Shown in pieces: positions 13,790 through 56,900 of a stretch of DNA of 64,000 nt. Both the position numbers and the translations under genes were made by a program. How positions within the stretch are numbered: the stretch's first letter is position 1; each line of letters begins with the position of its first letter. The notes under the pieces are model-generated. The model did no database searches. It had not been told where the DNA came from and saw nothing but the letters and a program-made list of their open reading frames with translations. The stretch is taken from the NCBI RefSeq assembly GCF_000002075.1, contig NW_004797271.1, positions 625,801 through 689,800 on the forward strand. Reading direction: 5' to 3'. The stretch comes from Aplysia californica (lineage: Eukaryota).

Positions 13790-16700
13790 AAACACACACA
13801 CACACACGCACACACACAAGTAGGCTTACAATCACATGTATAATATAAATGAGCAGCAATATAAACAATAATAATCGTAAGCTAGATACACACTCAATGT
13901 TAATGTTATTTTGATGCATGCTCTAAGGTCGTAAGTATACTTATTATTTAAGATGGAAGCATTTTGATAGATAATGGTAAAAATGACCTTCTGTATCTTT
14001 CTTTGTTACAGATCAGGAGCCAAGGTCTTTTACTTCTGACTGATGTTTTTGAGGGAATTAGGGATGAGGGAACTAGGGATGTTTGTTGTCTAAAAATAGC
14101 CATCTGGTTAAAGCTGAGAGCCTCGTAATCAACACTAGAGTGACAGCTGACCAGTATATATCAGGGGTGCCAAATGATTTTTGGAAAAAAACATGAAAAT
14201 GAGTGGAGCATCACATCTCACCTAAACCGAACCTTGTAAAGCTTATAAATGAGCAAACAAAAACATTTTTCTCTTACCTTTCCCCTTTCCTTTGCAATTC
14301 CAACGGATGAAAAAAAACGGACATTTGACTTCCCTGATATATACTATTTGTCCCAAAAGCATTCCCTTCTGGCCCAGTGACAATTAAGAATACAGCGGAG
14401 TCCACTTAAACGTAAACAGAACACAGTTTGTCCGGAATGAAGTGTTGTTAAGATATATCAAGAAGGGTCTTTTTCTGGCTACGCTGACTTCCTAAATATG
14501 TACAACTGGGCCTCAACTAAAGCAATGGAATATAAGACCTTGGCAACTGATACAATTCCTTAACCCTATCTGTACCCCCTGGGGGTCATTTTGTAACCCC
14601 GGGGTTGTATTTTTCACATTTTAGAATACTTCTAGTGCGAAGATCTCTTTGAAACTTTCAGTATTTCTCAAAAAATCATTTTGACAGACTGCTATAGAAA
14701 GAGTACGGATCGGATTAACGAGTAAATTTCCTCTTTAGAAAATGGTGGCACAGAGTTCCCCACCTCGTATGGATACGACAGTAAAACACGACGTACGGAC
14801 TTCCTAACCTTGTTTGGATACGACAGTAAAACACGACGTACGGATAGAGTTAATTCAGTTTATTTATGATTCAAACCTCATTATACCACAACCTCCACCC
14901 TATCATTATACAACCAGCCCAGCTTACTGCCAGATTTTGCTTTGCGTCACCATCAGGAAACTGGCCTCCAGAGGCAGGCCCTACATACTATAAAAAGGAA
15001 TGAAATAAAAAGAAAGACATACTTGTGGCATCCTCCAACCATCCACACTATCTCTAAAGTCTACACATTGTAATAATAATAATACACTTCAAAAACAGCA
15101 ATAAATTTTCTACATATACTGAAATACAAATTGTTTCTCGTCTAATGAAAAAAACCCATTTTTTTAAGCTCACAAACATTCTCACCTCTATGGTTTCTGT
15201 AAAAGAAGCAGTTGTTGGCGCATGTCTCTGGGTTTGTATCCCACACAGAGTCTCCGCACGCACACAAGGCAGGGAGCTGCATGCCACGACGGCTCACCTT
15301 CTCAATCAGGCTGTGCCTCAGAGCCCCCAGGTACCTGAAAAACCATCGCAACATAGAGGTAATACCTGAGCGCTCATACTCATATGATCTTATGCAGTTG
15401 CGAGCGCCGTAAAACCTTACTAAAACTTTAAAAATACCTGAAACATCATCACAAAGACCGATGTAGTACCTGAAACATCATTACATGGCCCAGGTAATAA
15501 TACCTGAAACATCATCACAAGACACAGGTAATACCTGAAACACCATCATATGACCTATGTAGTACCTGAAACATCATTACATGACCCAGGTAATGCTTGA
15601 TGAAACACCATCTCAAGATCCAGGTAATACCTGAAACATCACAAGAAACAGGTAATACTTGAAACATCATCTCAAGACCCAGGTAGTACCTGAAACATCA
15701 TCATATGACCCATGTAGTACCTGAAACATCATCTCAAGACCCAGGTAATACCTGAAACATCACAAGAAACAGGTAATACTTGAAACATCATTTCAAGACC
15801 CAGGTAGTACCTGAAACATCATCATATGACCCATGTAGTACCTGAAACATCATCTCAAGACCCAGGTAATACCTGAAACATCACAAGGCACAGGTAATAC
15901 CTGAAACACTATCACTTGTTGACCTACTTAATACCTGAAACATTATCACAAGACCCATTAATACCCGAAACATCACATGACCCAGGTAATACCTGAAACA
16001 TCATCACAAGACCCAGGTAATACCTGAACATCACCACAAGGCACAGGTAATACCTGATACATCCTCATAACACCTTGAAGCATCATTCAAGGAAACACGT
16101 AGAAATAACTGCACACATTTCACAGAAAGGAAGACGAATTTCATGCTGTGCAGCCTACCGGTATGTGTGTCCTGTCATGGTTGGGCTTATTATGTTGTTC
16201 CATACAGGTGTGTGCAATATAATGATTAGCCTTATTACAGTCCAGTCCATCTATAACAGCCTCTGTTATTACAGGAACTTGTGAACAGTGATAAATCAAA
16301 TCCCCATTTTTTTTCTCTATACTATAAGTATAAGTGTAAGTAATATGAACCCGATTATAACAGGGTTCAATTTGCGCAGACTCTGGTATAACAGTGATCT
16401 TGCAGTGCATGAACATGTTTTCGACCCGTTAATTTTAATAAGATTTGTCTCAACCAAGACATTTCGCCTGTATGTATGTATGATCGCTTGCCTAAACACA
16501 AACTTTCAAACACATAGGCGTACCCCCCCCCCTCCGCACCAAACAGTGTTGGGGTCACTGATCGATTCAGTCCCAGTGTCAGCAAAACAGCCAACTGGAA
16601 AAGGATCTGCGGTAATGTAATAATATATATATATATAGCCTACATTGTAGTAAGCTGAAGATGCAATGGTACTGATAATTTCCCTTGAGAATGGTTATAA

Positions 16701-25700: not shown

Positions 25701-28321
25701 AACTGTGGGGGTCTGTAGATGAAAAGACAGCAGTTGTTAGTATTCAGAAACCCATAGGCCTAACAAGTTAGTGCATGTCAATTATTAGAGTGTACTGTGT
25801 AGAGTGTCAAGTAAGAGTCATCAGTGCACTATAAGATATGTCAATCATGATTCATTAATGCACACTGTAGACATGTCAATCATGAGTCATTAGTGTACAC
25901 TGTAGACATATAATGTCAATCATGAGTCATTAGTGTACACTGTAGATATATAATGTCAATCATGAGTCATAAGTGTACACTGTAGATATAAAATAATGTC
26001 AATCATGAGTCATTAATGCACACTGTAGATATGTCAATCATGAGTCATTAGTGTTGTATGTGGACACGACAATCGTGGGACAATAACAAAAAACTATTTT
26101 GAGTAATTCTACAAACCAAAAGGTGAATCATGTGACATAGAATATACCAGAAAATAGGAACAAGCTCTAAAAATCATACAATTATAAGCAGACAATGTTC
26201 TAAACATATTATAATTTACACTATGTGACAATGAGCTGTGAGATCAAACAAAATCAGTTGTAGTCATTTTCAAACGTTCTACAATCACAACCTGTCGGTC
26301 TCTTTGTCTGTTCGACCACTCACTGCCAGTCTGTCACACATACTGGCTAGACTACTACCTGAATGTCTCTGGTCACTCTGCCCCATGAGCTGGCGGGCGT
26401 GGGGTCAACTCTCTGTGGCTGTGTGGAGAGTTTCTTGGACATCAATTGTTGACGAGCTTTGTCCATCACCTCATGACTCTAAAGACAGGAGAGTGGAGAT
26501 CTATAAATATAGCTTTGTCCTTCACGTCATGACTACCAAAACAGAAAAGTGAATTATATCTATTAATAGCTTTGCCTACTACCTCATAACTCTAGAAACA
26601 AAATGGTGGAGGCTACTTAAAGTATGCCTGTCACCTCATGATTCTGACAGACACAAACAGAAACAGAAGGGTGGTGATGATCTATTTAAAGCATCTCGCT
26701 CCTTTTTTATTCTTCTTCCTCTTTCGCCTTGTTTGTTTGAATAAAGAGAAGTACATCCACACAATGATGGCCATTTAATCCTGGGAAAAAAACTACAGAT
26801 ACAGACAGGAATAAAGAGGAAAAGAAAAAAAATTAGGACCTACCACTGGTGCCTTCCAACCATTCTCACTATTTTCATGTCCTCTAGGTGTCCACATAAC
26901 GGTATCTTTTAAGAAATTTTCACATCATTTTTGAATGTCCAGAATTTGAAAATGAAAGACAAAAATACTTAACCCCTTCACTGCCGGCTATGAGCTACAT
27001 AGCTGTGCCGGGTAAAATTGTTCCAATTACTACTAGCGTCACATAGAGCCCGTAACTCACAACCTCCATATCAGATATTTAAGATACACAGATACTTACC
27101 ACATCTGAATGAGATATGAATGCCGGCACCGAGTCCTTTTCCCAAGTTGACATATCCTCTGAAAGAGCCAAGAAATGTGAAAAAATCTTCACACTCACAT
27201 ATCACACACACAAAAATGTACTGGCAATTTCACAGCACAAAGCAAAAAACAGTCTTCAAACTAACTCACAAATTAAGAGACAAACTTAATTACAGGGTAA
27301 TAAAACAAACAAAGAAATCTAGTCACAGCGACAACAAAAAATGACTGACAACTAAATGAGCAGAAGTAATATAAGTGTACATCAATACAATGCCTACTGG
27401 TACATCAATAAAAGTCAACCGATACATCGATACATTTAGCAATACATCAACATGATATCGCTAATATTTGGAGCAAAAAAGCACCACACAAAATCTTGTA
27501 AGCGTGACATAAAAATCCCAATGACCTTACACTGACCTCCATATTTCTGAAATAATCGATTTCTGATGGCCAAATCCAAGTCCTGACGATGCAGACAGGT
27601 ATCTTTTCTAGAATTCTCAGCAGTGAGACATGACTGTTGCACGACCCTTCGCTCTTGTTCAAACTGTAAAGAGATCATCAAAACAGAAAGTAGCAGCATA
27701 CATTTAGTTCTCTCGTTTACTTCAGTTTTACTCGGTTGTTCTTCATATACTTGATTACTGGATCCTGGGAACAACATCATAGCACTCCGGGCATTGCCAT
27801 ACGTGCTCCGCTCCCCGCTCCAATATCCACCTCAGAGTCCATCTGCTGATCATTCTTCATATAACTTTGACTGTGCTTGTCCCAAAGAAGTGTCTTGATT
27901 TTTTTAAAGAGACATTGGACTTATAATTACCAGACCTTACTTTATCCAATACAAAATAGCATTTTTTCTACCTCATACAGCTTCTACCCTTGATCCTCAC
28001 CATATTCTGACACTCAAATTCATGAACTCACCCCCACAGATACACAAACACAGGCCCATGAAAACTAGATAACTTACAGCTTGCTCCGCCTCTTGAATTT
28101 GCTGCTGTCTCTTTAGCCTGGATGCCTGGCTGACACGCTGCTTCACTCGTTGCTGAAAACTTTTCAATCTGTTTTCCTTTTCTTCTTGCATGCGTCGGAT
28201 TTTCTCTTCCTCTTCTTTTGCTGCCATCTGCAATTAAACCCCAAAAAGTTTTGTCAGTGCAAAAAAAAAAAACTTGAAAAAGTTGTCAAATCAACCAAGG
28301 AACAGAAGAAAGCATGAGCAC

Positions 28322-28354: not shown

Positions 28355-31300
28355 CTAGAGTGTATGTGTCTGGGCACACACATATATCTATACCTTTTAC
28401 CATACTGACACACAATTACAACATGACAGCATATCTAAATTCAAGATTTTTAGCATACTTATTCTTCGTCTTTCACATTTTCCAAAAGCAATATATACAA
28501 AAAAAGATCTACTGCCATGGTAAAAATTCTTTGTAAAATATAACTGACAATCAGAGTAAGAACAAGAAAGGAAAATTATCTATAAACCCATCCCATCCTC
28601 TAAAAAGAAATGTTAACTTACTTGAGACTGGGGTATTTTAAAAAACACAAGCGCTGGAGTCTGGGCGCTTTTTTTTTTTAGGTTTAAAAAAACTCACCCC
28701 CTCACACCACATACACTAAATTTACACCACAGAATCATCAGACATTTCACAACAATATGCAAAATAAATGACAAAAGAAATATTTTATAAGCTTCTGTAT
28801 TATGATCTTTATAAACTGGACACAATTTGACCATGCCGGAAATTTTTTTTAGAGGTACTTGTCCAAACTGAGGAGGAGAACATTTACAGAAAAAGGGCTT
28901 GATTTATGTGGAATTGAAAACAAAATCAAGCAACTTAGCAATGCCAATCGGGCTTTCCCGCGAGGCAAAAATTTGGTCCCCGTTTACGAGCGATTTTGCG
29001 GACCCGGCCGAAGCGTAGGTGACTAACTTTGTCAACCTCGGTCTGCTCTATTTCCGAACCAATCCGAATGAAACTCGGCAACCAATCAGAAAATAGGGCA
29101 AACTAATGATATGTGGACGTTGAAGTTCGTACACATAAATTAACCTATACTTTTGGTGTCGGGAACACTTTCGTATCGTGTACACCGAAAACTATAAGGA
29201 GTTTGAATTTCAACGCCCAGATGGTAATAGATCTATCTATCCTCTATAGTGTGCTCAAATTTGAGAGTTCTGTGTCAAGTAGTTGTTTAGACCCGATCGT
29301 AAATCTACGACTACCCCCCTATCCAAAGCGGCTTCGCACGGAGATCGGCCATTTTCCCCTCACTCTCGTGGCAAATGTATGTGACCTACAAATCCCTGCA
29401 TGACTATTCCGGGCCCGTTCATTGGTCACTTGAAATAGGGCAATGGCGGGCGCGCACATCCGGTTGTTTTTCTCTCTATTCCCCTGTAACATCGCAATGG
29501 GGGTATTCTGAGGCGAGGTTATCTCATCTCGGGGTGTTCGCGTCTCAACGGGGGAAAAGAATTTTTAATTGTACGGCATGCTAGATTGAATTAACTTATC
29601 TTTTACGGTTGGCATGGTCTAAAGTCATCATAAAAAGCTTTGCAATTATTTAGTCACCCTGCCGACATATATTCTTAAAGATCCCATGTTGTGATACGAT
29701 GCTATAAATAAAATGGACTCATCCCGACACCCCTTTTTCGCAAAATCGTAATATGTACACCACAATTTTAATTATAACAAAATAACTACGAAATTGGTAG
29801 TAAATCTGACTGCAGAAATGATTTCTACACTCAAAAACACATCGGGTAGCCAAGTTTCTCTCGAACACTCGGATTAGTTACCGAGATATCGTCGATTTTC
29901 TTACAGAATCTGCTACTGCGTGGTCCACTTTTTAGGAGTATTTTCCTATATGCGGGTCATCCATATTTTGCCGACCTTTACAACCCCATAACTTTTTTAT
30001 TTATGAACCGATTCTCAAAATTCAAGAAGCATAATTATTAGAATTGAAAATTCTTTCTTAGGTACCAAAAAAAGGGGGGCAAAAGTGAAAATTTAAATTG
30101 TCATTGGCATTGCTAAGCAACTACATATTCTTTAAGTAGTTTTCTTTTATATTAAGCAGTAAAGTTGTTTATTTATTCTGAGTGGAAATTTTTTTTAAAG
30201 CAGGGTTCAATGCAAAGGAATGCCGCAAAATACACAGCTTTCATTGATGTCTCCCTTCCCTTTGCAGGTCTTATCTTACCAGGCTGACTTGCACGACATC
30301 TAATGCCTTGAAATTGAGTTACAAATTGCGACCAAAATCTACTCATAGTTCCTGCTCTTGTATTACAGGATCAGGATCTAAAGGCATCTTTCTTTTTTCT
30401 GTTTAAGTCACAGGTCTAACTCTGACTCTACTAGATCTAGATTTAACACAACCCGTTGGTTCCCCTAGGCGATTGCCGGTACTCATGCTTGGTCCCATGT
30501 TTCCCATTCTAAATGCTTATTCTCAGCTAATTCACAACTAAGTAAAAACTCTGAAAATACACCAAAGTTGCAGCTTTCGACCTCGCTAAAATCATCACTA
30601 TTATTGTTAGAAAGTCTCAAAATAGAGCGTGTTCGCCTCAACATCAAAGTGAATGCCAACTTCTTGACCGCAGTGACAGAAGGAAAACATTGCTGATCAG
30701 TTGATCTGAGCTTCCAAATCACCTGCTACACTGAAACTACTTCTCGTAAACAAGATCCGAAATGAAACTTTGATCAGCAGAAAGTAAATGATACTTGCAG
30801 TGCCGTTTTCTCCAACTTCCACAGTGAACTAGAAGCGCTTTTATGTTTAAAAATTGATCTCGCAAGGGGTGTAGGATTGGACAAAGATGTCAGGAGGGAA
30901 GCAACAGGTGCCGGAGAAGATTCAAAAGTAAAATGTAAGTAAGTAGGCTATTCAAGACTACACAGACTAGACTCTAGACTCTAGAGACTAGAGAAGGAAA
31001 CGCCTTTGCAAAGCTGTCACATTTCTAGGACTGAAAAGTAATATATTTGTACCAATAATTTTCAGAAAAACCTTATGCTCAGAGAATGATAAAGTACATT
31101 TCTTTTTAATGTTTTGTTTCAACAACGGACCATAAGAAAAAAGAAAAACGTGTTTGAGCTTGCTCGATCGTACTTTTTGTGTGTACAATAATTTCAATAA
31201 TGCAGTGAGAAAGAAAAGTCTGAATGATCCTTACAACAGCATCAGGCTGAACATCGTCATCTGCTGGCTCTACCCATGCACCTACTGGGACCACTTCAAC

Positions 31301-31700: not shown

Positions 31701-34700
31701 GTATGGATACATTATGATGAGAATGGTCTCCTAGAAATCTAGAATCTAGATCTAGATCTAGATCTAGATCTAGTAACTAGATTCTAGTATTAGACTTAGA
31801 TTCTAGATATAAATCTAGATCTAATCTAGATTCTAGATCTAGTTGTACAATAGTCGAATCTGCGGCGATCTTATACTTTAGCCTTAGCAGTGATCTTATA
31901 CTTTAGCACGTTAAATTCTTCAATTGATTTTATTTTATTCCCTTTTCCGTAACGAGCGACCACTTTAAAACATGATCTATCTAATCAAGATTATACTCAC
32001 TGGCTTCCAAAATCACAATGAGTGACAATGGAAGACCGAAAACCACTGTTATACCATCTGTTCATGACAAAATTACGGTAGTTTGCGCATTTTTAGGCCC
32101 AGTTCAAAGTTTTGAAGGTCTGAGTCGGGGATTAGTAGACTTTGGGAATTTAACCTGCTAATTAAAGTATAACGAAGTCTAGCCGTACTTAGATCTAGGT
32201 TTGGCCCTATCGACTCAAGCCTGTTAAGTACACAGTAGGGCTGGATTCTGCTCGGTTAATCGAAGGCTTGCAAATCAGCGGACGTCTTGCGCTAGAGGCT
32301 TGCGAGCAGGCTTGTGGTTTGATTTGCCTCCCGCTTGCTACCAGAGGGAACTTCCGGTGAGTTGTGACTCGTGGACAGTCCTACTGTACTGTGTCGTGAC
32401 GTCGCGAACTCTCGTGGCAGTGGGCTCAGTACATATTACAGAAGATTTTCTGGTTATTTGCGTTGAGAGGCTTACACCAAAAGGGCAAGATCGGTTGGGG
32501 TTTTTTTCATAGTTCGGTTGCAAAAAAAAAAAGCTCTATTCAATGCACTTAAAAATTAATATTGGATCGGCTATTCTTATGATGTTAAGGCCTGTTTATT
32601 TTTAATGTGCACGAGCCAAGCGCTTCATCGTCGCACGCAAAAGACTTCAGTTCGATTCCCGTATGGGGAGAAATTTTTACTGAGAACCTCCGTCTTTCTG
32701 CTGGGGCGTTGTTCCCTCTCAGCCCAGGTTGGCCCTGACATTGGGTTGAAGTAGGCCTAGCCCGTCTCCTAAATGTTCTGTATTATGTCACTGTGAGTGT
32801 AACACATCTACAAAATAGGTTACATACATACGATACAAAAGCCAATCACAACGACCCCTGGAGTTTTCCATTTTAGGGTAATCTAAGTCAACTTATTCTT
32901 ATTACCAGAAACCTAGGTCTCTGTTACTGCAATACCACGCTCCCTCTCACTTATCCATTCGCTTAGCTGATCAACGGCGGGAAGTTAAAAATAACTTCAG
33001 CTCTCTACGCCTTGCACCAAAACAAGCCCAGCCTCTCCCTTCCTCCACGGTTCAAAGTTCACACAACGAACAGTACTGTCTTGCTGTTTGAACACATCGG
33101 ACTGTCTTGTCGCCATCAAGACGGTCCTACCACATCGAGCCCGTGCCGCTCGCTCGGTGTATCGAGACAGTACAAGTCAGCAGGTCAGGTTTGGAGCGTG
33201 TCCTGGGGCAAATCTCTAGGCCTAGCGCAAATCAGTACTGTGTGAATTGTGGGACCTGTGGCTGCGGACGGGACTTGAGGCTTACGCAGGCCTTCGAAAT
33301 CGAGTAAACTACAGCGCCACTCTGTGGGCGAGATCTCTCACTTTCCCCCTCTCTCTTTTTCTGACGTAAGTGGCTTCGCGGATCGCAAGCAGGGTGGAGA
33401 TGATGAGGGGGCCTGACACGAGTGGCTTCGCGGATTGCTGGTTACTGTGGACTTGAAGTTTAGACTAGACCAAGGAGGTTACAGTTTGCGCTAGACTCAA
33501 CTTATCATGCTGGTGATTTGATTTGATGATTTGACCTAGTGATTTTAGGCTTGTGACTTGAACTAGGGGCTTGTGAGCATGAGTGGGTTTGCTACCGGGG
33601 TACAGCCCTAGTACACAGGTCTCATTAGATCTAGATCTAGTAATTATTCAGGTTCAAATACATGCAAGTCAGTAAGGCACCTTTTGGTTTTGTCTGAAAT
33701 ACAAATACTTTAGGCATTGCAAACTAAAAATTTCATTTACAATTCAGCCATCAATATTAAGTATGGCTAGACTGCCAGTCTAGCCGTACTTTAAATCTTA
33801 GGCCCTATTAACATTAGAAAACAGGAGGTTTAAAATACATGCACTGTCATTAAGGCACCTGGTTTCGTCTCAAATACAAATACTTTAGGTACTGCACACT
33901 AAAAATGTATATTTACAATTCAGTAGGCCTATTTTTTGTAAATGGTGAGTCTAGCCATCATATTAAGAATAAGTACGGCTAGACTGCGAGTCTAGCCGTA
34001 CTTAAGTATGGCTAGACTGCCAGTCTAGCCGTCATTAAGTACGGCTAGCCTCTTCCAAAGTATAAGATCACCGAACCTGCCTTAACGGAAACCTGTCTTA
34101 ACAGAATCTCCCCGCTCCCCCCTATATTCCTCTTTGTAGTAAAGATCTACCTGCATAAAACAGAAACCTTTCCAAAGCGGAAACGGAAAGAAAAATCGGG
34201 AGGACTTCCGTAACGAGCGACCACTATGAGACAGAGCAGAATTGAGGGCTTGGGGTAGGGGTAAGGGCAGGGTTAGGGTTAGGTCTAGGCCTCTTCTTTA
34301 TTGTGTTTGATAGGGTGGTCGCTCGTTACGGAAGTCCTCCCGAAAAATCTGCTCCCTTACGAGGGTTTCACCTGTCTCTAAGACAGAAAATGCTTTTCCC
34401 GCTCAGCCCTGATTTGAAACAAAACTCGCAAGTTTGGTTCTGCCGACTCTAAACTTAACACTATGGCCATGCCGCTGGGCGAGGAAGGGGAGTAGGGGTG
34501 CAATTTTGGGGTAGATGTTACGGTTACCCCATCATGTGAGCCCTGAGCGATACAGATGGTCAGTGTTGTGTGGGTGTGAAATCTCACGACTTCACGTGAG
34601 AGTGCTCGAGTAGTAGCGAGCCACTATGGAAACTTTCCTGGGTCCAGAAGCCAGAGGTGTGAAATTAGATTGACCAATGCCTGCCGCCCTGATCGTACGG

Positions 34701-38017: not shown

Positions 38018-41000
38018 ACTTACAATATACTCACACACTTACAACTCACACACACACACCTACATATTTCCAATTGATGGCGTTCTTGCTGCTCACTAGT
38101 TCCATGATTCTATTTTTAGGGCAAGTTCGAACCCTTTTGCCATGGATAAGAGACAACCTTGTGCAAGAGCGGCCGGAACTTTTCATGCAAGGAGACACAG
38201 TGTAAGTAATGAATGGTGTAAGCTTTAGTCATCTATTTCTAGTAACCAACGTGACTTGTCAGTGTAAAGTTTTGGTCCACAAGTAAACAACAGTGTAAAA
38301 TTTTGGTCTTCTTCTAGTATTTACTTTATCCGTCCTCTTGCACCTCTAGGGAGTCGAGGGGAGAAAGAGCTTCCTGTCTCTTGCAAGTTTGATGCCCTGG
38401 CTGGGTGTTATCAGGGTATCCTTCACATCCTGGATCCAGGTCTTTCTTGGTCTTTCTCTTGCCTTATACCCTGATACTTTCTTGTAGTAGGCTTTACTTG
38501 CAAGCTGGTTAGGTGTCATACGTGTGAGATGTCCAAACCACCTGATTCTCTGCCTTCGAATGTAGTGGAGGACAGGTGTTGTTCCCACCATTTCTCTGAT
38601 CTTGTTGTTTCTGACCATGTCCTGTCTGGTTTTGTTGACTGGTTCCTCAGACATCTCATCTCGCAGATGGTTATCTTACGTTCCAGATTTTTGGTCAGGG
38701 TCCATGTCTGGCACTGGTAGGTCAAGGTGGGGATGAAGATAGAGTTAATGAGCTTGGCTTTGGTCTCAATGGGGATGTTAAGATGTTTGAGGAGTGGGGC
38801 AAGTAGGTAGCTGTCACTGTTAGCCTTTTGTACTCTCGTTTCGATTACTCTGTTGAGACGTGCGTCTTCAGAAAAGATGCTTCCAAGATACTTGAACTCG
38901 CTGACTTGTTTCAGCGGATTTCCGTCGATGGTGATGTTATGGTTGCCAGGTGTTCTGCTGATTTTCATCATCTCCGTTTTGCTTTTACTGATCTTCATGT
39001 TGAGCTTTTCACTTTGTGTATTCAGCCTGTCTTTGTGCTCTTGAAGTTGCTCTTCTTTCTCATATGCCAGGCTTGATCATCTGCAAACAGCATCTCATTT
39101 AGGTCTATTGGGTTGGGGTTTGCTTCTTTTATAATTTTGTCCATGTATATATATTATATGAATAGTAGCGGTGATAACACACACCCTTATCTCACTCCAG
39201 ATGACATGTCGAACCAGTCAGTGAGTCCGTTTTGGGTGCGGACTGTGCTCATACTGTTGGTATAGATGGGTCTGATGCATGAACAATTAAATACTTCGGT
39301 CTTGTAGCAACATACGGTAAAAGACTTTGGTCTTCTCACCACAAACATTCTACTTTTTTGTGTCTGTCAAGTTCTTGTCTTCCTGTATCCACAGCCGTCC
39401 TGGAATTCTTGTCTTGATCAACGAAGCAGACTGGGAGCTTATGGTGAGTGGTTCTGGTCATCTATTTGTGAAAGCTGAACAGCAAAGATAATTTGGGTCG
39501 ATGGTCAACCTTGGTTATTGAATTTTTGGGGGCATTTTCTGATGGTGCAAGTCCATCCATTTACACGGAAATTATCTTGTTGTGTAGATCCGTCCCTCAT
39601 AAAGATATTATTTAATCTAATCTAATGTAACTCCATCTAACGCAAGAAAATTATTTAGTCCTGTAAATCTATCCATTGCAAAGAAATTCTTAATTATCTA
39701 ATCATGTATATCCATCCATTGCAAGAAAACATTCTAACCTTGTAAGTTCATTATTCCCAAGGAAATTTTCATGAGAGACTTACAAAAACACCACAAAAAA
39801 ACAAGCTTCTCTTTACTCGCATGCATCTTGAAAATAAGACCACACAACAAAACTACCTTTTCTTTGGGCTTAAGCTTTTAGAACTTCTTGAGCTCTATGA
39901 GAAAACTTTTTCTGAGGGGAAAAGAGAAGAAAACTAATTAAGAAAAATTCCTGACATGCAGTAGAACACAGATAGGTCGAAGTCAGAAGAATAGAAATCA
40001 TGCATTCGTCGAACTGTGCCTGCGGTCCTGTTTTTTGGGTGTTTTTCTTCATCTTTGTAAGAGATCCCTCAAACTATGGATCCCTCAAACTACCCAGGCT
40101 GGGTCCAAATTCGAACTATCCGTGTTATGCTGTATGTTGAGTGAATTACTCCAACGATATTCAGTTTGTACCATACTGTTCTTGGACCATGTTCATGGTG
40201 CCTTTCAAAATTCATTGATATCTTTGATATATGAACTGTGGGTTTTTTTCGACATGCGGATAACTTGAGAACAACAAATGTACGCCATTGGCCGATATTT
40301 GTAGTAACAGCTATCTTGTTTGATGTCATTGAGGGATTCCCGCTTTGTTGTCGTTCATGGTGGCAACACGACCACAAAGCACTATTGCAGTATTTTTTTA
40401 AAGCCTGTAGCTTACAGTGGCGTGGTGGTTGAGTGGTTAGTGCGCTTGTCTCCAAAGCAGAAAGTCCAGGTTCGAGCCTTGGTTCGGCCTCAGTTTTTTT
40501 TTTAAAATGTTTTTTAAATCCATCAAAGTCACAACATCACATGCTTTTTCAGTTATCTTATATATTTTTTGAGAAAATTTTTTTAAAAATTAGTCATTTA
40601 CTTCTCCAACTCGAAGTCAGGTACCCATTACAGGTGGGGTGGGGGGGGGGGGGATCCGTGGCCGCACCACCCCACTATGGGCCACAGGCTTTTAAAATAC
40701 TGCAATAGTGCATTGCGATCGTGTTGCCACCGTGAACGACAACAAAGTGGGAATCCCTCAATGACGTCAAACAAGATGGCTGTTACTATAAATATCGGCC
40801 AATGGCGTACATCTGTCGTTCTCAAGTTATCCGCATGTGTTTTTTGGTCCTGCTTTCTACAATGTTTGTGCAGGAATTTAGAGGACCCTACTAATCTAGC
40901 ATTTCCCCCCTCAAAGTGATTATTAATTATGAATTGGTGTGCTTGTCTTTTGATTTGATAAACCAGTATTTAATATTTATCAGTAAAAACATTGTCTAGT

Positions 41001-46400: not shown

Positions 46401-47589
46401 ATAATGAGAATAAAATCACACATCATCTAAAAGAAAAAACATAGACCCATTTCCCCAACCTAAATTTAATTGTAAAAAAAAAAAAAGCATGAGCTTCATG
46501 GTCTACTGTGAAGTGCCTGCAAAGAAGAACCGGTCAGTAGAAAAGTAGAGAGATAGTCAAAGAAGCAAAACCGTCCACAATCGGGATTACAACGGAATTC
46601 TTGGTCCATGGTAACTCCCCCCACAATTTTTTCTACACTGACCAGCATAAAAGATTAAAACACTATCCGAATTTCAATACATTTATCAAATATTGTTTTA
46701 TCAAATTCACATTCCAACAGCTTAAAACAATTTTGCGTAAGTGACAAATGTGAAGGACGCCTCATGCAATAGACAGGGAATGCACAAGGGACAGACGTAA
46801 AACCCAATAAAGTTCTGTTAGAGCTGACAACATGCTAACAACCCACTATTGACTTTGTTTTACCTACTAATGTGAAAAAATTGTTTTCTTCACGACTATT
46901 GTGGTGGCAATAAAGGAGGAATTAAAAACAAAACAAAAGGCGAGTAAAAAACGAGGCATCAAGCATTTTTGTTTGTATTTGTCTCCACCAATGGCACATA
47001 TTCATGTCAAAGGTAAATCGGACAGTGACAACAAAAACCAGAACCCCTTTTTTAATGTGTTTTTATGACCCCATCAACGCAAGTTAGCTCATTTAGGAGG
47101 CAGCCTTCTCACCCTGCCTATCAGGTCCAACCTGAGCTGAGAGACCACAATATTAAATAAAAATTTCTCCCCACTTCACAATCGAACTCAGGTTTCCTGC
47201 ATATGACAGCGAAGTGCCAAACTGCTACACCACAGACACCCACCTGTAGCAGAAAAGACCCATACACCTTTCACATTTTTATAAGGAGCCACTAACTACA
47301 CATGGTCATCAGTAAACACAACATTTTTCCAAACTTTTAAAACAAAACATTCATGTTGTCTATTAAAACTTTGCCCCCCCCCCCCCCCCCTCCTTCCACA
47401 GAGATAAGATCTAGCTACACATTGCAGTGTAACATTAAGACTCGTCAATTACAAAGATTCTGCTGTTTTAAACAAGGCATTAACACAAAAAAGTCCACAT
47501 CTTCTTCACAAAGGAACCATCAACACCCCAAACACTCTCTCACTCAGTCATCATCAAACTCACAGACAGGGAAAACTTTGTGGCAAAAT

Positions 47590-47908
47590 TCAATGTCTCC
47601 TCTCTCGGTCTTTATCTTTGTGTTTGCTTTTCTTTTTCTCTTCCTTCCTTCGCTCCTTGTGTTTGGAGGAATGTTCCTTCCTGTCTTTACTGCGTGACCT
47701 ACGGCGCTCTCTGTCACGAGATCGCGATCTCTTCCTCTCCCTTGACCTTGACCTCTTGCGGTCATGTGAGCGTGAGCGAGATCGTTTCCTGTCCTTCTCC
47801 TTCGAGTGAGATCCCCGTTTGTCACTTTTGCTGGATTTGTAATCCTCTTTTTCTTTACGCTGTCGGTCACGCTCGCGCTCTAGCTCTCGGGAGAAATCAT
47901 CACCAGAT
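47590..47908 (-). CDS. PRPF38B: PRPF38B last coding exon (RS/RE/RD domain)
   Basis: SGDDFSRELERERDRQRKEKE...RSRSRERKRSRSRDRERRRSRSKD...DRERRH stop. Confidence 0.9.
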
Positions 47909-50900
47909 CTGAGGACGGCGGGACAAGAACATTAAGTATACGTACAAGTACTCTGCACTGGCATTGTGTGTGGGGAGAGGAGGAGAAGAAAAAACACAGA
48001 AATAACTCATCGAAAGTAAGAGCGGAACCAATGTTTCTTTTTCTAAGACAGACAACCATCTAGACCTCCACATAGACCTGGAGCTAGTCTGTCTAAGTAA
48101 TGAGAAGCACATCGACACAAAAAACAGTCATTTAGATCAGCGAGACAGTAAAACACACATCCCCTGCCCCCAACAAACACACACATATATTCACAAACCA
48201 CCTGCAATAAGGTTAGTTAGTTTAGTATGAGGTTTTACAGCGCTCGCAACTGCAAAAGGTCATATGAGCAGTAAGGTTAGGGCAAAAGGAGCCACATCTC
48301 ATACAGTCAAGCAAGCAAATAGCGAAATCAGCAAAATGAAGAAACTGTGTACAAATTTCATAATAATGCATGTTTCAAATGCAAAGAATACATACAGGCC
48401 TAAATTGTATAAACAGAAAACATTCAGGGGCCTAAAAATCCGTTCACTGTGTTTTGTTATATGTACATGTTTGCTCTATGTGTCTAGGTGGTTGGAAGCG
48501 CCACTGGTAGGTCCTACTTCTTTTCTTTCCTTCTATCATTCTGTCCGTCCATCTTACTTTTTTTTTTCCCCCAGCATTAAATGACCACTATTCTGTTGAT
48601 GTGCTTCCTTTAAACAAACAAACTATATGTATGCTACACTGTATGTGAAATACAATCTAGGTCAGACAGACAGTAAAACATTCCCCCATCCCTCGACACT
48701 CACATATTAACAATACACCTCATGTAGGGGTTATGTCCAGGGAACCAGGGCTCTTACATATATCATAGCTGCCACTCAGGAAATACAAAAAAGGAGGAAA
48801 TTCACGCGAAGGCGTACGAGCTCTTTCCGAAGGCCGGAGTAAAACCAGTGAGATCCAGAGGCAATTTATTGGAACATCTAGCCTATGGTTTTGGAAGGGA
48901 AAACTGTCATATTTGTTAACTATAGGCTACTGAATTTAAATGTATTTGAACCCCCCCCCCAAGACAGTAAGTAGACTAACATGCACAATTTGACACAGTT
49001 TGGTGACAAAAAATCCAGTCTTTGTTGCCAGCTGGTGTCTCATTAAAAAGTTTCTTTCACTTTAAACTTGTGCATCGATGTAGAGCAGTATTGGATCCAG
49101 GAGGCAACACCTTTGCCACTGTACTGAGCGATTTCTTTATCGCACCAAACGCAAAGTGCAGCAAGCGGCTTGTTCAATTTTCTAATGAACTTTTCAAGTC
49201 ACACACCATCTGCTTCTTTCTCATTTCAGCTCCTTTTATTTTTGCATTCAGCATCAATCTCTCTCGAATTTCTGCCGCTTTCAAGGACAACTTGGCGTGC
49301 CATCGTCCCGATGCTCGATCGACACTGTCACTCCATAATAAACAATGTGAAACTAGTGCCAGGCACAGAAGAATGGATAAGTAGAAAGCTACGTGCGGAC
49401 CTGAGTAAGCCGCGTTTTCCTCTCTCTCCTGGTTCGGTGTTCTCCGCAAGTAAAAAAAAAGTTTCGCAATTTGTGACCGAGAGTGGTCCGGCGGAGATGG
49501 AGGAAAGTAGCGGGAAAAGCTAGATGAAGCGGAGTTTCTGCTATTTAGCGGAAAAGTGGCAGCTATGATATATAAGGAATACAATCTTGATCAGACAGAC
49601 AGTAAAACATACCCCCATCCCAAACACTCACACATTTGCAATACAACTCATATAGGGGTTATGTCAAGGGAGCCAAATCTCAAATATGGAATACAATCTA
49701 GATCAGACAGTAAAACACAAACACACACACACATACTCCACACACCTGGAGTAGGGGCTATGTCGAGGGGAGCCAGACCTCCTTGGGGGCGATCGCCGTG
49801 GCGACCGCCGGGCTCCAGGGGGGGAAGGCCGTCGCACTGGGGGAGAGCCTCGCCGTGGTGGGGGAGACCTGCGCGACGTGCTGCTGCCGTTATGGGAGTC
49901 CTCACGTCGGCCGTTGCTGGCGCTGCCTCTTCTGAAATGTTTCATTCCACAATATTGTATATCTTATTTTCCTTTCTTCCTTTGTCCATACACATATTAT
50001 TTACAGATTTTTATTGAGAAAAATGTTTGTTGTTCCTTAAAATCGCCAATATACATATTTAAAAAGTTAAGAAAAAGAGTAACAGTGCTTTACTCATAAT
50101 ATGAACAAATTGTTTTGAAAATACTGAAAAAGAAATATTTCATTCCACAACATAGTACATATCATTTTCCTTTGTCTGTACGACTAAAAAATGTAAACAC
50201 ATTCTTTACAGATTTTTATTTTGAATAATGCTTGTTGGTCCTTTACATCGCCAATAAATATAAAAAACATAATTAGGAAAAGGAATAACAGTGCTTTGCT
50301 CATATGAACAAATCGTGTTGAGAATACTGAAAAAAAAATATACTCCAAAACAGCTCTGACACAGAGCCCTGCACAGTTGCCACCAAAAACAGCGTGTGTG
50401 GAAGAATGTGTGTGTGTGTATTTCAATAAGTATATATGCCATTATTAAAACAATTTCTCAAAGTGGAATTATCTGCTTTCTATGTATTTACCCTCGTTGG
50501 GACAGAGCTGCTCGCTCTGCCTCTCCAAACGATAGTTCGTCATCAGGGATGTGTTCCGGCTCATCAGCTCCAACTTCCTGTTCTGCATACTCGGGGAAAC
50601 CTGCAGCCACCGGCCTTGACCTCATCTTCATGTCAATGTCTTTCTGAAATGGGCCATAACAATGTTTTCCCACATGAATGTCAATGCAGATTTGGTTCCA
50701 ACAGCAAGTCTCAGGTAATAGAGGTACCAAAAACCCATCCTCCCCCCATTTTTGGAACCTATTACATGGGAGAAATCTTCAGGGTGTCCAGCAATATTTG
50801 CTGAAAAAAAAATTTACTACCCAGCAAAGAAAGCCCCACACCAGCTTGAAAAAGGGAGTTCATTTGTGCCATCAATAACATATACAATGTATTATCATTA

Positions 50901-53900
50901 CATAATATATAGAACGAAAATAACACGCAACAACCTCCAGTCAACAAAATGGAGGATAGACAGACTATCGCAAGCTTGCTCACCACTAGATTTAGTTTTA
51001 GTTTTACTGTTTAGTAATGTTTTTACAGCGCTCGCAACTGCACGAGTGACAAGGGGTGGATGTCAACAGAAAAATCTAAACGGGCAACCAAGCTTACTCT
51101 GCTCACCTTTCTAGCCTCAACAGCACAAAGTCTGCTTCGACTATCAAGGCACCCCGGAAATAGTGGGTCACAAGAGTGACAAACATACATAAGAAATAGA
51201 GGAAAAATAACGATAGTAAGGATGAGAAGAAAAAGCAGCAGTTCCCCCTATGTTGTTACGGCACAGTATAAGCAGGACATTGATAAATCAGCCCATACTT
51301 ACAATTCTACTGTGCATAAGAGCACCCCCCCCCCCTTTGGGAATGGCCTAAAGACACTTCAGTCAGTAGCACTGGTTGGGGGGGGGGGGGGTAGATTTAG
51401 ACCTAATGTGTGCACACAGGGTGACTGCCAAACCAGCTTCTCAGTTTTCCAGGGGGTCATCCATTTTCCAGGGGCAAGTTACATAACAACACACACACAC
51501 ATAAAATATACCCAGTCAACAACATGTCAGTGTTGCACTGGGGTCTTGTTTGACTAGCCTAAGTATTTCAGTGTGTTATAAACTTTCCTCTCATTATTAT
51601 ATATTAAAAAATGAATCCTGCTTTGAGCGTTCGGAAGGGCCTTGAACAAGAATTTCGACTGTGAAGAACCAATCTGGGTGTCATGACTCATAATATTATG
51701 AACATGAAAGGCAAAAATTATTGCTCAAACTCTAACTTGAATGGCCCCAGTAGACCCATGAAGTGAGAGAGTTGTAAGAACTGGGGGGGGGGGGGGGGAC
51801 TTTGAATGAACTTTGGTGACCCCAACAACAAACGCTGTGCTCACGTGCACAGGTTCATTGACCGGTCACGATGGCGAGCCCGACAATCTAAAAATCAGAC
51901 GACGCTTATACTTTCTTTTCTCTCCCCCCCCCCACATGTGACAGCACAGAGACGAGTCCGAGTACTGATTAAATTTTATTTGCGCTGCAGCACAGCGTTT
52001 AGATATAGATCTATATATTCATACTGCACAACCTGCATGTCACAAATGTTACGTTAGTTATCAGTCCATCGCCGGCTAATTTCTGAAAGCGAAAGTAGAT
52101 CATGATTTTCCCGATCGAGCCTCGGTGTCACGCACACTTTCGCCTGCCACCATAGCCGCCATTTTGCGTGAAAAATACTCTCAAACGAGGAAAAGGTGAA
52201 CGAATATTATCATATCACAATCGCGACCGGCAAAAACAGAGTCATGTACTGCGGCTAGGGTTCAATTAAGCATGTTTTGGCTTCATCACTCCGTACGCAG
52301 ATTAATTTACGACCGTTTATCAAATGTTTACTACCTTCACGGCGTATTTACTACCATTTACGACCTTTGCGGCCAGGGCGCTGAATTTACGACTTTTTTT
52401 GCGACTTTACTGGACACCCTGAATCTTCTATCATTTCTGAGCATACATTAAATAGCTATATCACCTATATCATTTGACAAAATAAAAAGCAAACAAATGA
52501 TGCCTTTATCAAAATTGCCACTGAGAAACATAGATAAAGATAATGTCTTACTGACACTGTAAGGGTTAACTCATTCAAGCCTCGGCTTTTTTTTAAAGCC
52601 CAACAACCACAGCAGTCGGAAAATTTTTGAGGTGTAATGAAATGAAACAAGTGGGTCTTACGCTCGTTTGCCCCTTCCCATAGCGTCTACCTGAAAACTT
52701 TGGAGATAATGCCTGTCCTGCCAACGCACAGGGTCCGGGTACCAGGTGCATTCAGTAAATATATAGTAAGCAGCTCAAACAAGTTCAAAGAGTATGTGGC
52801 CTACCATTGTCGAAACCAGGACATAAAGAGTTGTTAACCCAATGTAAATTGAACTTTGCTTCTTGTTACATATGTTTTGATTCCCTATTGATTTGAATTT
52901 TCAAATTATTTTCTTATTACAATATATATCCTCACAGGTGCAGTTGTTGTGGTCCTGTACAATAGCTCATTCATAAGTGTTTCTAAAGAACAGCATTATG
53001 AAATTGAGATAAAGGGATACATGCCAAGTGGCACTGATTTGATGACATCCACTAATGAAAAATGTTGTACCGGTACCTGACTTTTACAATTTTGACTCCA
53101 AATGTTTACCATCTGACTAAAGATTAAAATCTATGATAACATAATTAATTCTTTTAGCTTTCAGACATTCTTTGTCATGCTCTGAAACAATGCTCCTGAT
53201 TTCGTGGACGTGAATGACTGCAAAATCACAGCGGTTTAAAAATACAGTTCTTTTAAAACTGATGGTAAAGAGGGGAAAAGCTGGGCTAAAAATTACAACA
53301 GCTATTTGAGCCGACTTAATCAGACTGACCTGTACAGGCACGGGTATGCGTGGGAAGAGGGTAGAGTACCACTCCAGTTTGACCAGCCACTGACGCAACA
53401 TCTCGCCGATGGTCATGAAGTGACCGCCTCCCGCTTTCACGTCCAGCTCCTGCACACAACAACCAGAGAGAAGAAAGAAAAACAAAAACTGGTTAGACAA
53501 CTCTCAATCAGCTAAAACTTTACAGCTGTTCAAAGAAACAAGTGAAATAGAAGAACCATAGGGTAAAAACCTTATACCCCTAGAAACATAAAGTTGAAAA
53601 TGAACATTGCCGACAAATATCACAAGGCATACTTCTGATCACAAGTAAAAATGGCTTAATCAAAAAAGGAACTTCATGCTTCATACTCAACATCTGACAT
53701 CGAAAAGCAATGACATCCTACACTGAATGGAGAAATGTAACTGTTTTGAGCGCAATTTGGATTTTTGCCTCCATCCACAACATCCCCCCCTTTTATTCCA
53801 CAGGAAGTAACACCAACTCCCCCCCCCCTTTCCTCAATAATACACCCTCTGAGAGCAGCGCCCAATATATAAGGCAAGATTTAACCAATGAGAACTATTT

Positions 53901-56900
53901 TAAGCGAGCTATTAAGAATCGTTCTGTGAGCTATCACTGTCATGTACAAGAACAAAGTTATTGTATCCATGGCAACGTGTGATGTTTACAGACATGATAC
54001 AAGGAAATCCTGCAGTTTAGAATGAGGAGAGCAACTATTTGATCAATCAATCACCACTGGTAAACATTCAAGGACAAAATTATTAAACTCAGCCATCTTA
54101 AACACATGGAGAAAAAAAAAAAGGAAAAAAAGTGCCCCCTTCTTGGGCCCCTGAGGATTTAATTATAACCTCAAGTCGAGGCGTCCGAGATAGAGGCCGT
54201 GGAGGCTGCTGGGAGATAATCCTAATCCTTGCACAGGCTAAGGCAAAGACCCTGCACATACAAAACAGCACATTTATTATGGCATTAGGGGGAAAGGTAA
54301 AGCTCTCAGTATCATCATAACAACCTAACCTTACAAACTGCATTGACAGACTGATAGATCAGTGATCAAAAGCATGTATATGTACAGCCTAAACATCTAG
54401 ACCAATACTTTTATAAATACAAAACCATCTTAACCTCACTGAAATAAGAATCAGATCGATAAACTATCTCGATAAACATAGTGTGTATTAGTGTTTACAT
54501 CTTTAGAGAAATAAACCACTGCTAAATTTGTACTACCAAATTTGTCACGATCTCTCTCATACATCCTGTCTAAACATTAACAAATCAAGATAAGCATAAA
54601 CCATAGAAGAAGACGACATAGCACTTTGAATCAAACAGACTATAATTCCCAGATAGATCTCCAACAACTTGCAAGGAGATGACAATGTCTGGGAGTATTT
54701 AAGGCTCTGTCGCGGTTCAAGAACATTGTAAAGCACAAAGAGCTTATTTTATAATAGGGATCTGTGCTGCATCAATTAATTTTCATTATCATTAGCATTA
54801 TTGTTGTTATTCCAGCACTCTTTACTTCTGAGCACATGGACAAATATCATCAGTGATTTTTCTAGCAAGGGGAGGCAAAGAAAAAGATCTGTGATTTGCC
54901 ACAATCATCAAGTGCAAATTCTGTGACAGACATCGGCGATCATGGTTCCCCATTCATTCCTTTGCTCGCACGCTTTTAAAAAAGCTATGTTCAATTTTGC
55001 CAGTGATAGATAAGTGTTCATCAAGGCCCTTATGTTTATTCAAATGTCCCACACAGTTTTCCAACGGTAGTACCACCAACGTGTTCAGAGTGCTATGTCT
55101 GACAGCTGAGGCATCAGAGGGCAAAGGACAAACAGGAGAGTGAGGAGGAAGACAAAGCTGCAACTCATGCAGAAATACTCACCCATGTCAGGATGAGCTG
55201 AGCTGTAACACGACACAGCAGCTCACCATCCAAGAGGGGGAGAGGTTCTCATGTGTAATGTGTAGTGTGCATGTGTGTATGTGTGCCTGTGTCTTGCATA
55301 GTGAGTCTGAAATCTAGCAGTTCTAATCTCAAAAGAATTCTAAATTTCTTCTCAGAACTTTGGCCCTGGGACAATTTATTTTTCCATTTTTAACTACCCT
55401 ATTCCAAACATAAACAAATCATGTTAAATTAAATTCCCTAAAGAATGCACTATCTAAAAAATTACCACACAAATCACAGCAGAACTCTGTGTTCTATTCC
55501 ATAGTTCAAAAAAGGGAAAGTTGGATGATTTCGAGAGACAACAACAACAAGTTTCTTCACTTGGATCGACTGCATAGCTGGCTAACTGGTGCACGAGTCA
55601 GCACTGGGGCGGGTCATGTTGCGTGTGTGTTTTTGTGTGTCTGTCTGGGATGTATTCACATACCTCATCATCATCCAAATAGCCATCATACCAGTCCCAG
55701 AGATCTTGAGGTTGTTGCGTGTATCTGTACAATAGACAAGTCACAATTGTTATGGTTTCTCCAAAAGAAATAGAAGGTCAACAGTGAGAGACAAACCGCT
55801 ACTCTTTACAAATGGGAAAATCCAACAAATCATGTAATATAAAATCCTAGCACAAGTTCTAATGTGGGCCAAAAACAAAAATGCACACTTGAAACACTTG
55901 GAAGCACAACATTCGTGTGTCATTATAGATGCCGGCAAGACCCAGAGGAAGATAAACATACTGTGGCTTGCCCTCACTGTTTGTTGTATTTTTATAGAGA
56001 GTGGCAAGACCTACAGGAAGACAGAAAAATATCAAAGTCAAAGAATATCATTCCACCAATACTGTACAAGAAACATTCTGAAAAAGGTGGGTACAAGCAA
56101 TATACCTGGTATACAGCCCTCTCTTATTTTCTATACAGTACTGGGGAAAAGGTACTGTCAAAAAATGATTAGTTCATGATACTGAAATACTGTGCTCCAC
56201 GTTGTCTTTTTAAAAAAATAGTACATTAACATCCTTAGTGCTGACAGCCGATTAAAAAGGCCGTAAGTGGTGATCCTGCTTTATTACACAGCACACAGAT
56301 ATTCTGATGTCGAGACTGGATTTTCTTTGTATATTGTTCAGAGCTCCTGCTTAATTACACCGCACACAGATATTTTGTTGCTGGGTCTGGTATTTATTTG
56401 TTTGTAGTTTTGAAGTCCTGCCAAGTCATGCTGCTCACATAGCCTATGGCAGACCTACCTGATGTACATGAAGCCTAGTCCTCTTATGTAGGGTGAGTCA
56501 CGATGTGTGATCAGGTTATTCACCTGTTTCTTGGTCAGCTTCAAGGTGAACAATTTGTAGAGAAGACAGTAAGCACTGGACACAATGCCCCCTGCCCCAA
56601 CACCTCTCACCTGAAACAAAACATTTGTACTGTGAAAAGAGACAAAAATACCATGAAACAGTTTGAAAAGTGCAGATAATAAACCCCCCCCCCTCACCTC
56701 AAACAAAAAAAAAACAAAACCAAAACAAGCATTATTGACAATTTATGCAGAGTTGACAGATTGTGCTGAACACAATGCACACATCCCCCCCCCCCCCCTT
56801 TTCTACATATTCCAAAAACATCTCTCACCTAAAATAAAGCACTGCATCCACAAGAGAATTGGGTACCTTACTGAGCTTTACAAAGATCTTGTCAGTAAGT

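What the first reader, a model, noticed from the sequence alone, without database searches (positions are those of the whole stretch)
15334..56840. Tandem repeats are systematically seeded at exon/intron junctions, producing arrays of decoy splice sites
Seen in sequence: at roughly ten junctions in three genes, the neighbouring intronic repeat is not generic satellite but a tandem amplification of the junction itself, with the real site as the terminal unit. In CCDC15 this affects the exon 10 acceptor, exon 9 donor and acceptor, exon 8 donor, exon 6 donor and exon 5 acceptor; in PRPF38B the exon 7 donor and acceptor side and the exon 3 acceptor; in URM1 the exon 3 donor. Unit lengths (about 30-200 bp) and sequences are unrelated, so the events are independent. 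Expansion is always into the intron. Inference: a mutational process focused on splice junctions (for example co-transcriptional R-loops or breaks repaired by repeated template re-priming), filtered by exon definition. This would both lengthen introns and supply raw material for new splice isoforms. I cannot tell whether it is already described for this lineage.
Basis: partly seen in the sequence, partly recalled or inferred. Interest (0 to 1): 0.8.

Follow-up and report, generated by a model that had tools for sequence, protein, structure and literature searches.

The report
Minisatellites copied from exon-intron junctions
In two genes of this sea-slug-like genome, ten introns begin or end with tandem repeats copied from the neighbouring splice junction; this "mirage" pattern is already known from amphioxus and the human F7 gene, and here it is commoner at junctions than chance predicts.

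Summary
Of 35 curated junctions, 10 carry a local tandem repeat whose first unit is the junction itself or abuts it. Seven are in the CCDC15-like gene and three in PRPF38B. The URM1 exon 3 donor does not exceed chance. One case he missed, the CCDC15 exon 8 acceptor, also passes.

The arrays are unrelated to each other. The three I searched are unique in the 927-Mb genome. Those around exons 8 and 9 are also present in contigs of an independent sample.

In an a-priori control of 129-148 junctions from Pfam-defined myosin, kinesin and dynein exons of the same genome, repeat starts fall within 30 nt of the junction 2.4-5 times more often than expected (P 0.013 to 3e-5). So the pattern is systematic but moderate.

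The architecture is not new. It matches the "mirage" minisatellites of amphioxus and the human F7 intron 7 VNTR, where the extra donor sites stay silent.

The two arrays that could be segmented show no similarity gradient away from the junction. RNA depth on CCDC15 was too low to test use of the decoy sites.

First-stage notes of this scan report the same pattern in other genes of this genome.

The parts
15335..16075 (-). Array at the CCDC15-like exon 10 acceptor (first exon base 15334). Period is 31, with a higher-order period of 121. Each unit carries TTTCAG|GTA. A SINE 3' fragment interrupts the array at about 15379-15430.
   Evidence: 8 decoy acceptors score at least as high as the real site; unique in the genome; SINE read pile-up
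17708..18425 (-). Array at the CCDC15-like exon 9 donor. The exon ends at 18407, and 19 nt of exon plus the donor are repeated 11 times with a period of about 62-66.
   Evidence: 8 decoys with the identical AAG|GTTGGT; unique in the genome
18407..18598 (-). CCDC15-like exon 9
   Evidence: open frame with canonical AG and GT; spanned by X5 contig 5
18599..18860 (-). Two decayed upstream copies of the exon 9 acceptor plus about 45-50 nt of exon 9. Period is about 100. TRF did not call them.
   Evidence: (block 18548-18703)
18861..19438 (-). Arrays at the CCDC15-like exon 8 donor (exon ends at 19435). Periods are 56/112 and 77. Units begin with a variant of AG|GTGAGGAAATGTC. The decoys are weaker than the real site.
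   Evidence: unique in the genome; X5 contigs 5 and 6; one extra 77-nt unit
19435..19618 (-). CCDC15-like exon 8
   Evidence: the few RNA reads lie here
19619..20222 (-). Pyrimidine-rich array (period 27) that abuts the exon 8 acceptor. It contains no exon sequence.
25276..25626 (-). Array at the CCDC15-like exon 6 donor (exon ends at 25595). It includes 32 nt of exon. Period is 34, with a higher-order period of 103.
26479..26600 (-). Two upstream copies of the exon 5 acceptor plus about 24 nt of exon (first exon base 26478). Period is about 58.
   Evidence: (probe score 47 against nulls of 15-16)
49572..49781 (-). Repeat at the PRPF38B exon 7 donor (exon ends at 49746). It includes about 30-36 nt of exon. 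Period is about 112, in 2 copies.
49932..50352 (-). Repeat at the PRPF38B exon 7 acceptor (first exon base 49931). Period is about 198. Each unit ends in ...TTTCAG, and similarity stops exactly at the AG.
56611..56840 (-). Two decayed pseudo-exon copies of the PRPF38B exon 3 acceptor plus up to about 75 nt of exon (first exon base 56610).
   Evidence: PRP38 domain match fixes the exon start; borderline
38202..38320 (+). Claimed echo of the URM1 exon 3 donor (short CAGTGTAA-like motifs). It is not above chance.
   Evidence: score 21 against a null of 19
24009..24145 (-). Intron-internal array about 200 nt from the nearest exon. Listed as a counter-example that is not linked to a junction.
25775..26085 (-). 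Array 60 nt upstream of the CCDC15-like exon 6 acceptor. It does not include the junction.

Best explanation
These are 'mirage'-type intronic minisatellites.

Origin: each arose independently, at its own locus, from a tandem duplication of 27-200 nt. The unit either spans an exon/intron boundary or starts at it.

Growth: the array then expanded by ordinary slippage or unequal exchange inside the array.

Tolerance: the gene survives because the copy still joined to the exon remains the site that is used. The other copies become silent intronic pseudo-sites. This was shown experimentally for human F7. It is inferred here, not shown.

Frequency: duplications inside exons are purged, so only intron-side expansion is ever seen. 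In this genome such arrays are 2.4-5 times more frequent at junctions than deeper in the flanks, and they are larger there.

Likely cause of the excess: I consider tolerance, longer retention next to a selected anchor, and a mild local mutational bias more likely than breaks aimed at splice sites. This part remains unresolved.
For: - Sequence anatomy of ten junction arrays.
- Local origin: three arrays have no other copy in the genome, and no two arrays are alike.
- The arrays are real DNA with variable copy number in an independent sample.
- The exon share of the unit varies from 0 to about 108 nt, as expected from scattered breakpoints.
- Edge units resemble each other more than they resemble inner units in CCDC15 E9. 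There is no similarity gradient in locus L002.
- Decoy cores are kept intact, which fits silent sites.
- The same architecture appears in an unbiased sample, for example the L002, L014 and L069 donors.
- Enrichment and larger size at junctions.
- Published precedents: the F7 IVS7 VNTR, whose first unit spans the boundary and whose pseudo-sites are silent because of 5'-to-3' scanning (PMC1557585); amphioxus mirages, which do not disturb splicing (PMC3087553, PMC3902484).
Against: - A 2.4-5x excess within 30 nt of junctions is not predicted by uniform seeding alone. I could not show that retention or detectability accounts for it.
- The excess rose to about 9x when probes matching multi-copy sequence were set aside. 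That mask is crude and also catches paralogous exons.
- About a third of array edges fall within 7 nt of the junction, by my own tally of the edge positions; no script tested this. The PRPF38B E7 acceptor is one example. This could instead point to breakpoints at the junction.
- No RNA evidence here shows that the decoys are silent. CCDC15 depth was about 1 read.
Confidence: 0.6

Rival explanations
1. Junction-focused mutagenesis. Co-transcriptional events at splice sites, such as R-loops, paused polymerase or breaks, are repaired with duplication. Under this view junctions are true hotspots for minisatellite birth.
For: - Enrichment of repeat starts within 30 nt of junctions in an unbiased sample.
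- Junction arrays are larger than others.
- Several array edges coincide with the junction to within a few nt.
- Base composition near junctions differs only slightly from deep intron, so composition alone does not explain the excess.
Against: - No gradient of unit similarity away from the junction.
- The exon share of the unit ranges from 0 to about 108 nt.
- A shoulder of 2-4x extends to about 150 nt, so the effect is not a sharp spike.
- No transcription or R-loop data were available.
- The sample is small (7-10 events).
Confidence: 0.25
2. Chance plus ascertainment. Minisatellites are simply very common in this genome's introns, and a reader looking at junctions will find some there.
For: - Local repeats are dense (0.5 blocks per kb).
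- A first, cruder count gave only 1.9x (P about 0.05).
- The window was picked post hoc. Its rate (10 of 35) is four times that of the unbiased set.
- In CCDC15 the non-array parts of intron 9 are multi-copy DNA. The ancestral introns may therefore have been only a few hundred nt, which brings any array close to a junction.
Against: - The event-based test and the within-flank permutation both reject it (P 0.013 to 3e-5).
- The crude count counted the second copy of dispersed repeat pairs as separate events.
Confidence: 0.1
3. The arrays are kept because they are useful, for example as spare or recursive splice sites, U1-binding platforms or splicing enhancers.
For: - Decoy cores are well conserved.
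- Units of the E10 acceptor array juxtapose acceptor and donor motifs (TTTCAG|GTA), as recursive splice sites do.
- Junction arrays are large.
Against: - Unit lengths are mostly not multiples of three.
- Decoys at the E8 donor, E8 acceptor and PRPF38B E7 donor are degraded or absent.
- Copy number varies between individuals.
- No RNA evidence supports use of the decoys.
Confidence: 0.08
4. Assembly artefact of a draft genome.
For: The assembly has many gaps (N runs appear in many loci). Short-read contigs collapse parts of arrays (contig 2).
Against: Contigs from an independent sample (X5) cross exon 9 with its acceptor echoes and the adjacent array, and cross exon 8 with both junctions.
Confidence: 0.02

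Closest known systems
Amphioxus 'mirage' minisatellites (Adh3, globins, TnC, PGBD5; PMC3087553, PMC3902484, which cite Canestro et al. 2002)
   Same: Both are minisatellite-like tandem duplications of exon/intron boundaries. Both occur at 5' and 3' boundaries. Units are tens to about 160 nt. Many units keep AG/GT. Copy number varies between haplotypes. Several cases can occur in one gene.
   Different: The phylum differs (a mollusc-like genome against a cephalochordate). Here some arrays stop exactly at the junction without any exon sequence. Normal splicing is shown for amphioxus but not here.
Human F7 intron 7 37-bp VNTR with 5' pseudo-sites (PMC1557585)
   Same: The first unit spans the exon/intron boundary. 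The authentic donor is followed by identical donor copies, as at the CCDC15 E9 donor, where 8 decoys share the same 9-mer.
   Different: F7 is a single locus in which silence of the pseudo-sites and 5'-to-3' scanning were shown by mutagenesis. Here there are many loci, acceptor-side arrays as well, and no functional data.
Intron gain by tandem duplication of an AGGT-containing segment (Rogers model; PMC3265369, PMC2891723)
   Same: A tandem duplication creates paired splice signals. Mirage arrays have been proposed as raw material for new introns (PMC3087553).
   Different: Here the arrays lengthen existing introns. No new intron position was shown.
Recursive splice sites
   Same: Units of the E10 acceptor array carry a juxtaposed acceptor and donor motif.
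   Different: There is no evidence of stepwise splicing. The resemblance is in sequence only.

Membership tests
Mirage minisatellite (tandem duplication of an exon/intron boundary) | Head-to-tail repeats lying in an intron directly against an exon | tested here: met
   10 of 35 junctions; TRF and self-alignment blocks
Mirage minisatellite (tandem duplication of an exon/intron boundary) | The unit contains exon sequence plus the splice signal | tested here: met
   Exon share is 4-75 nt at 8 of the 10 arrays (about 4 nt at the CCDC15 E10 acceptor and E8 donor by ungapped block edge). The CCDC15 E8 acceptor and PRPF38B E7 acceptor arrays end at the junction with no exon part.
Mirage minisatellite (tandem duplication of an exon/intron boundary) | Local origin, not a dispersed satellite or transposon | tested here: met
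   Only own-locus matches in the 927-Mb genome for three arrays; no similarity among arrays
Mirage minisatellite (tandem duplication of an exon/intron boundary) | Regular splicing is not disturbed and the extra sites are silent | tested here: inconclusive
   Three poly-A RNA runs gave about 1 read of depth on CCDC15 exons and no joints
Mirage minisatellite (tandem duplication of an exon/intron boundary) | Length instability between haplotypes or individuals | tested here: inconclusive
   X5 contigs differ by 170 nt (15760-15929) and by one 77-nt unit (18906-18982). Short-read contigs can collapse repeats.
F7-type VNTR with identical 5' pseudo-sites | Authentic donor followed by pseudo-donors identical in sequence | tested here: met
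   CCDC15 E9 donor: 8 decoys with AAG|GTTGGT; locus L002 donor
F7-type VNTR with identical 5' pseudo-sites | The most upstream site is chosen by 5'-to-3' scanning | not testable with these tools
   Needs minigenes or deep RNA data
Transposon-borne splice sites (introner-like elements) | Many dispersed copies of the element in the genome | tested here: not met
Intron gain by tandem duplication | Lineage-specific intron position flanked by duplicated exon sequence | not tested
   No orthologous gene structures were available. Spliced models were not joined; exons were searched one by one by reference.

The most novel reading that the evidence does not exclude
Splice junctions are genuine hotspots for the birth and growth of minisatellites in this gastropod-like genome. 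The cause would be a transcription- or splicing-coupled DNA lesion. The same process would underlie amphioxus 'mirages', making it a general and so far unquantified driver of intron lengthening and of new splice sites in highly polymorphic marine invertebrates.
Probability: 0.25. Interest if true: 0.75.

Novelty: new member of a known kind. Interest (0 to 1): 0.45.

Why it matters
If the excess at junctions is mutational, it would point to a link between splicing or transcription and local DNA duplication. It would also offer a simple route by which introns grow and acquire spare splice sites.

Even on the ordinary reading, these natural arrays of identical donors or acceptors are ready-made substrates for asking how the spliceosome picks the authentic site. 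They also show that amphioxus 'mirages' are not confined to cephalochordates.

Practically, such arrays can mislead gene predictors and short-read assemblers in this genome.

Tried and rejected
- RNA evidence: three raw poly-A RNA runs were laid on 15200-21199. Depth on CCDC15 exons was about 1 read, with no joints. Reads piled up on SINE copies instead.
- Transposon masking through whole-genome DNA search: only 39 of 29,154 candidates were scored, and one young 1.18-kb element dominated them.
- Transposon masking from my 320-kb sample: this catches only the highest-copy families and also flags paralogous exons.
- First enrichment count by self-alignment blocks: it gave 1.9x. I replaced it because it counted the second copy of dispersed repeat pairs as separate events.
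- Composition as an explanation: sequence near junctions is only marginally simpler than far intron.
- Gene name: Pfam gave no family for the CCDC15-like exons, nor for the hAT-like and reverse-transcriptase-like frames.
- Unit segmentation failed for five of the arrays tried.
- Literature: the mouse pseudoautosomal-region paper and the C. elegans minisatellite paper proved irrelevant. The original mirage paper (PMC117041) is not held.
Full report
**Setting**

The window is G000:C1:625801-689800 of a 927,310,431-base assembly in 4,332 contigs. From memory, those figures match the Aplysia californica draft. No tool named the organism.

Three genes fall within the finding's coordinates:
- PRPF38B on the minus strand. 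Its exons match the PRP38 family.
- URM1 on the plus strand. Its last exon matches the Urm1 family.
No tool confirmed that name.

I never joined a spliced model. Exons were searched one at a time by reference.

**Checking the observation**

Tandem Repeats Finder lists long arrays between 15.4 and 26.1 kb. Reading the minus strand shows the following.
- Exon 9 ends in GGAAAG|GTTGGT, and that junction recurs eleven times in array 17708-18425.
- The exon 9 acceptor and about 45-50 nt of exon recur twice upstream.
- The exon 8 donor heads arrays 18861-19438.
- A pyrimidine-rich array runs up to the exon 8 acceptor.
- The last 32 nt of exon 6 and its donor belong to array 25276-25626.
- The exon 5 acceptor and 24 nt of exon recur twice.
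- The exon 10 acceptor resembles the unit of array 15335-16075, which a SINE fragment interrupts.
- In PRPF38B, exon 7 has a two-copy repeat over its donor. It also has a 198-nt repeat in which every unit ends in the acceptor.
- PRPF38B exon 3 has two decayed pseudo-exon copies upstream.

The formal test slid a 60-nt probe across each junction. A hit required a match in the next 600 nt of intron and no match in the 600 nt behind, judged against reversed-sequence nulls. It called 10 of 35 curated junctions. The URM1 exon 3 donor scored 21 against a null of 19 and fails.

Further checks support local, independent origin:
- The arrays share no similarity with each other.
- Three of them have no other copy in the genome.
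- Contigs of an independent sample (X5) cross exons 8 and 9 with their junction repeats and differ in copy number.
- Decoys as strong as the real site exist at about six of the ten junctions. At the exon 9 donor, eight decoys share its exact 9-mer.

**Is it more than chance?**

The window was chosen after the fact, so I built a control chosen beforehand. I took exons of the same genome that match the myosin-head, kinesin and dynein-heavy-chain families, each with 1.5 kb of flank. Splice sites were placed with a weight matrix inside the open frame. This gave 67 usable exons, 129 flanks and 157 kb.

- A first count of self-alignment blocks gave 10 proximal edges in [-60,+30) against 5.4 expected. 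That count also tallied the second copy of dispersed repeat pairs.
- The event-based scan counts only first units. Starts within 30 nt of the junction numbered 9, 9 and 7 at three thresholds, against 2.3, 1.7 and 1.5 expected from the rate beyond 150 nt.
- With ten secondary exons added (148 junctions), the counts were 9, 10 and 8 against 2.6, 1.9 and 1.7. That is 3.4-5.2x, with P from 1.5e-3 to 3e-5.
- A permutation that keeps each flank's own number of events gave 9, 9 and 7 against 3.7, 2.8 and 2.7, with P of 0.009, 0.001 and 0.013.
- A shoulder of 2-4x reaches to about 150 nt. Starts deeper than 30 nt inside exons are not enriched.
- Junction-proximal blocks are longer than distant ones, with a median of 311 against 122 nt (P 0.003). 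They are slightly more diverged, but not significantly.

The control set contains textbook cases. The donor at locus L002 has 23 nt of exon repeated 17 times. The donor at L014 carries 108 nt of exon. L069 is another.

The link to junctions is therefore real in this genome but moderate. About 6-7% of junctions carry such a repeat, against 29% in this window.

**Mechanism**

Uniform seeding alone predicts a flat profile, so something favours junctions. I could not separate the candidate causes.

Against stepwise addition at the junction:
- In the exon 9 donor array, the junction unit is most like its neighbour and the units at the far end, and least like the inner units.
- In L002 there is no trend at all.
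- Both are the usual pattern for a minisatellite that grows from within.
- The exon share of the units ranges from 0 to about 108 nt, so breakpoints are scattered.

For a hotspot:
- By my tally of the edge positions, about a third of array edges lie within 7 nt of the junction. The PRPF38B exon 7 acceptor repeat stops exactly at the AG.
- Composition near junctions differs little from deep intron.
- Setting aside probes that match multi-copy DNA raised the ratio rather than lowering it, although that mask is crude.

In CCDC15 intron 9, the non-array part is multi-copy DNA. The ancestral introns there may have been a few hundred nt long, which helps explain why this gene is so rich in junction arrays.

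**What is known**

- Human F7 intron 7 holds a 37-bp VNTR whose first unit spans the exon 7 boundary. Its identical pseudo-donors stay silent because the most upstream site is selected by 5'-to-3' scanning (PMC1557585).
- In amphioxus, tandem repeats spanning exon/intron boundaries were named 'mirages'. They are reported in Adh3, globin, troponin C and PGBD5 genes, at both boundaries, with variable copy number and without disturbing splicing. Their origin is called unclear, and they are proposed as a source of new introns (PMC3087553, PMC3902484).
- Full-text searches found no report for Aplysia or other molluscs.
- First-stage notes of this scan describe the same pattern in Sec16, TRIP12, TRRAP and other genes of this genome. 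I did not test those loci, but they led me to run the genome-level control.

**Verdict**

It belongs to a known kind, now seen in a new lineage, with a first rough measure of enrichment.

Noticed in passing
window 15379-15430 and 17282-17418: These are SINE copies. Poly-A RNA reads from three runs pile up here with loose ends running into poly-A or into unrelated flanks, so the reads come from many genomic copies. The first copy sits inside the first unit of the exon 10 acceptor array, so it inserted after the array formed.
   Followed up: partly
window 28930-30120: A 1.18-kb element with at least 40 copies at 95-98% identity across the genome. It is a very young, high-copy repeat inside a CCDC15-like intron.
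   Followed up: no
window 20400-22100 (+) and 38346-38998 (-): Open frames that look like a hAT-type transposase remnant and a LINE reverse transcriptase. Pfam gave no hit at E of 0.01 or below. Depth in X5 marks 20400-21199 as multi-copy.
   Followed up: partly
window 15760-15929 and 18906-18982: Contigs of an independent sample (X5) lack 170 nt of the exon 10 acceptor array and carry one extra 77-nt unit near the exon 8 donor. This is either copy-number polymorphism or collapse of repeats in short-read contigs.
   Followed up: partly
L066/L067 (G000:C472:345542-345712 and 346444-346614): Two near-identical dynein-heavy-chain exon matches lie 902 bp apart. This is either a tandem duplication of a whole exon or an assembly duplicate.
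   Followed up: no
window 49932-50352: Similarity between the 198-nt units stops exactly at the acceptor AG of PRPF38B exon 7. No exon base is included, so the repeat boundary and the splice junction coincide to the base.
   Followed up: partly
window 31737-31842 and 62952-62988: Irregular ATCTAG/CTAGAT arrays. Another first-stage note (s1-721761) flags them at the starts of first introns.
   Followed up: no
window 24680-24800 and 23560-23600: tRNA-like SINE heads (GGTTCGAATCC-type box B) inside CCDC15-like introns 6 and 7. These stretches match other loci in my 320-kb sample.
   Followed up: no
control loci, donor against acceptor sides: At threshold 34 in the unbiased set, 6 of 60 donor junctions carry a junction repeat but only 1 of 56 acceptors does. 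In the window the two sides are balanced. This may reflect stronger selection against duplicated acceptors.
   Followed up: partly
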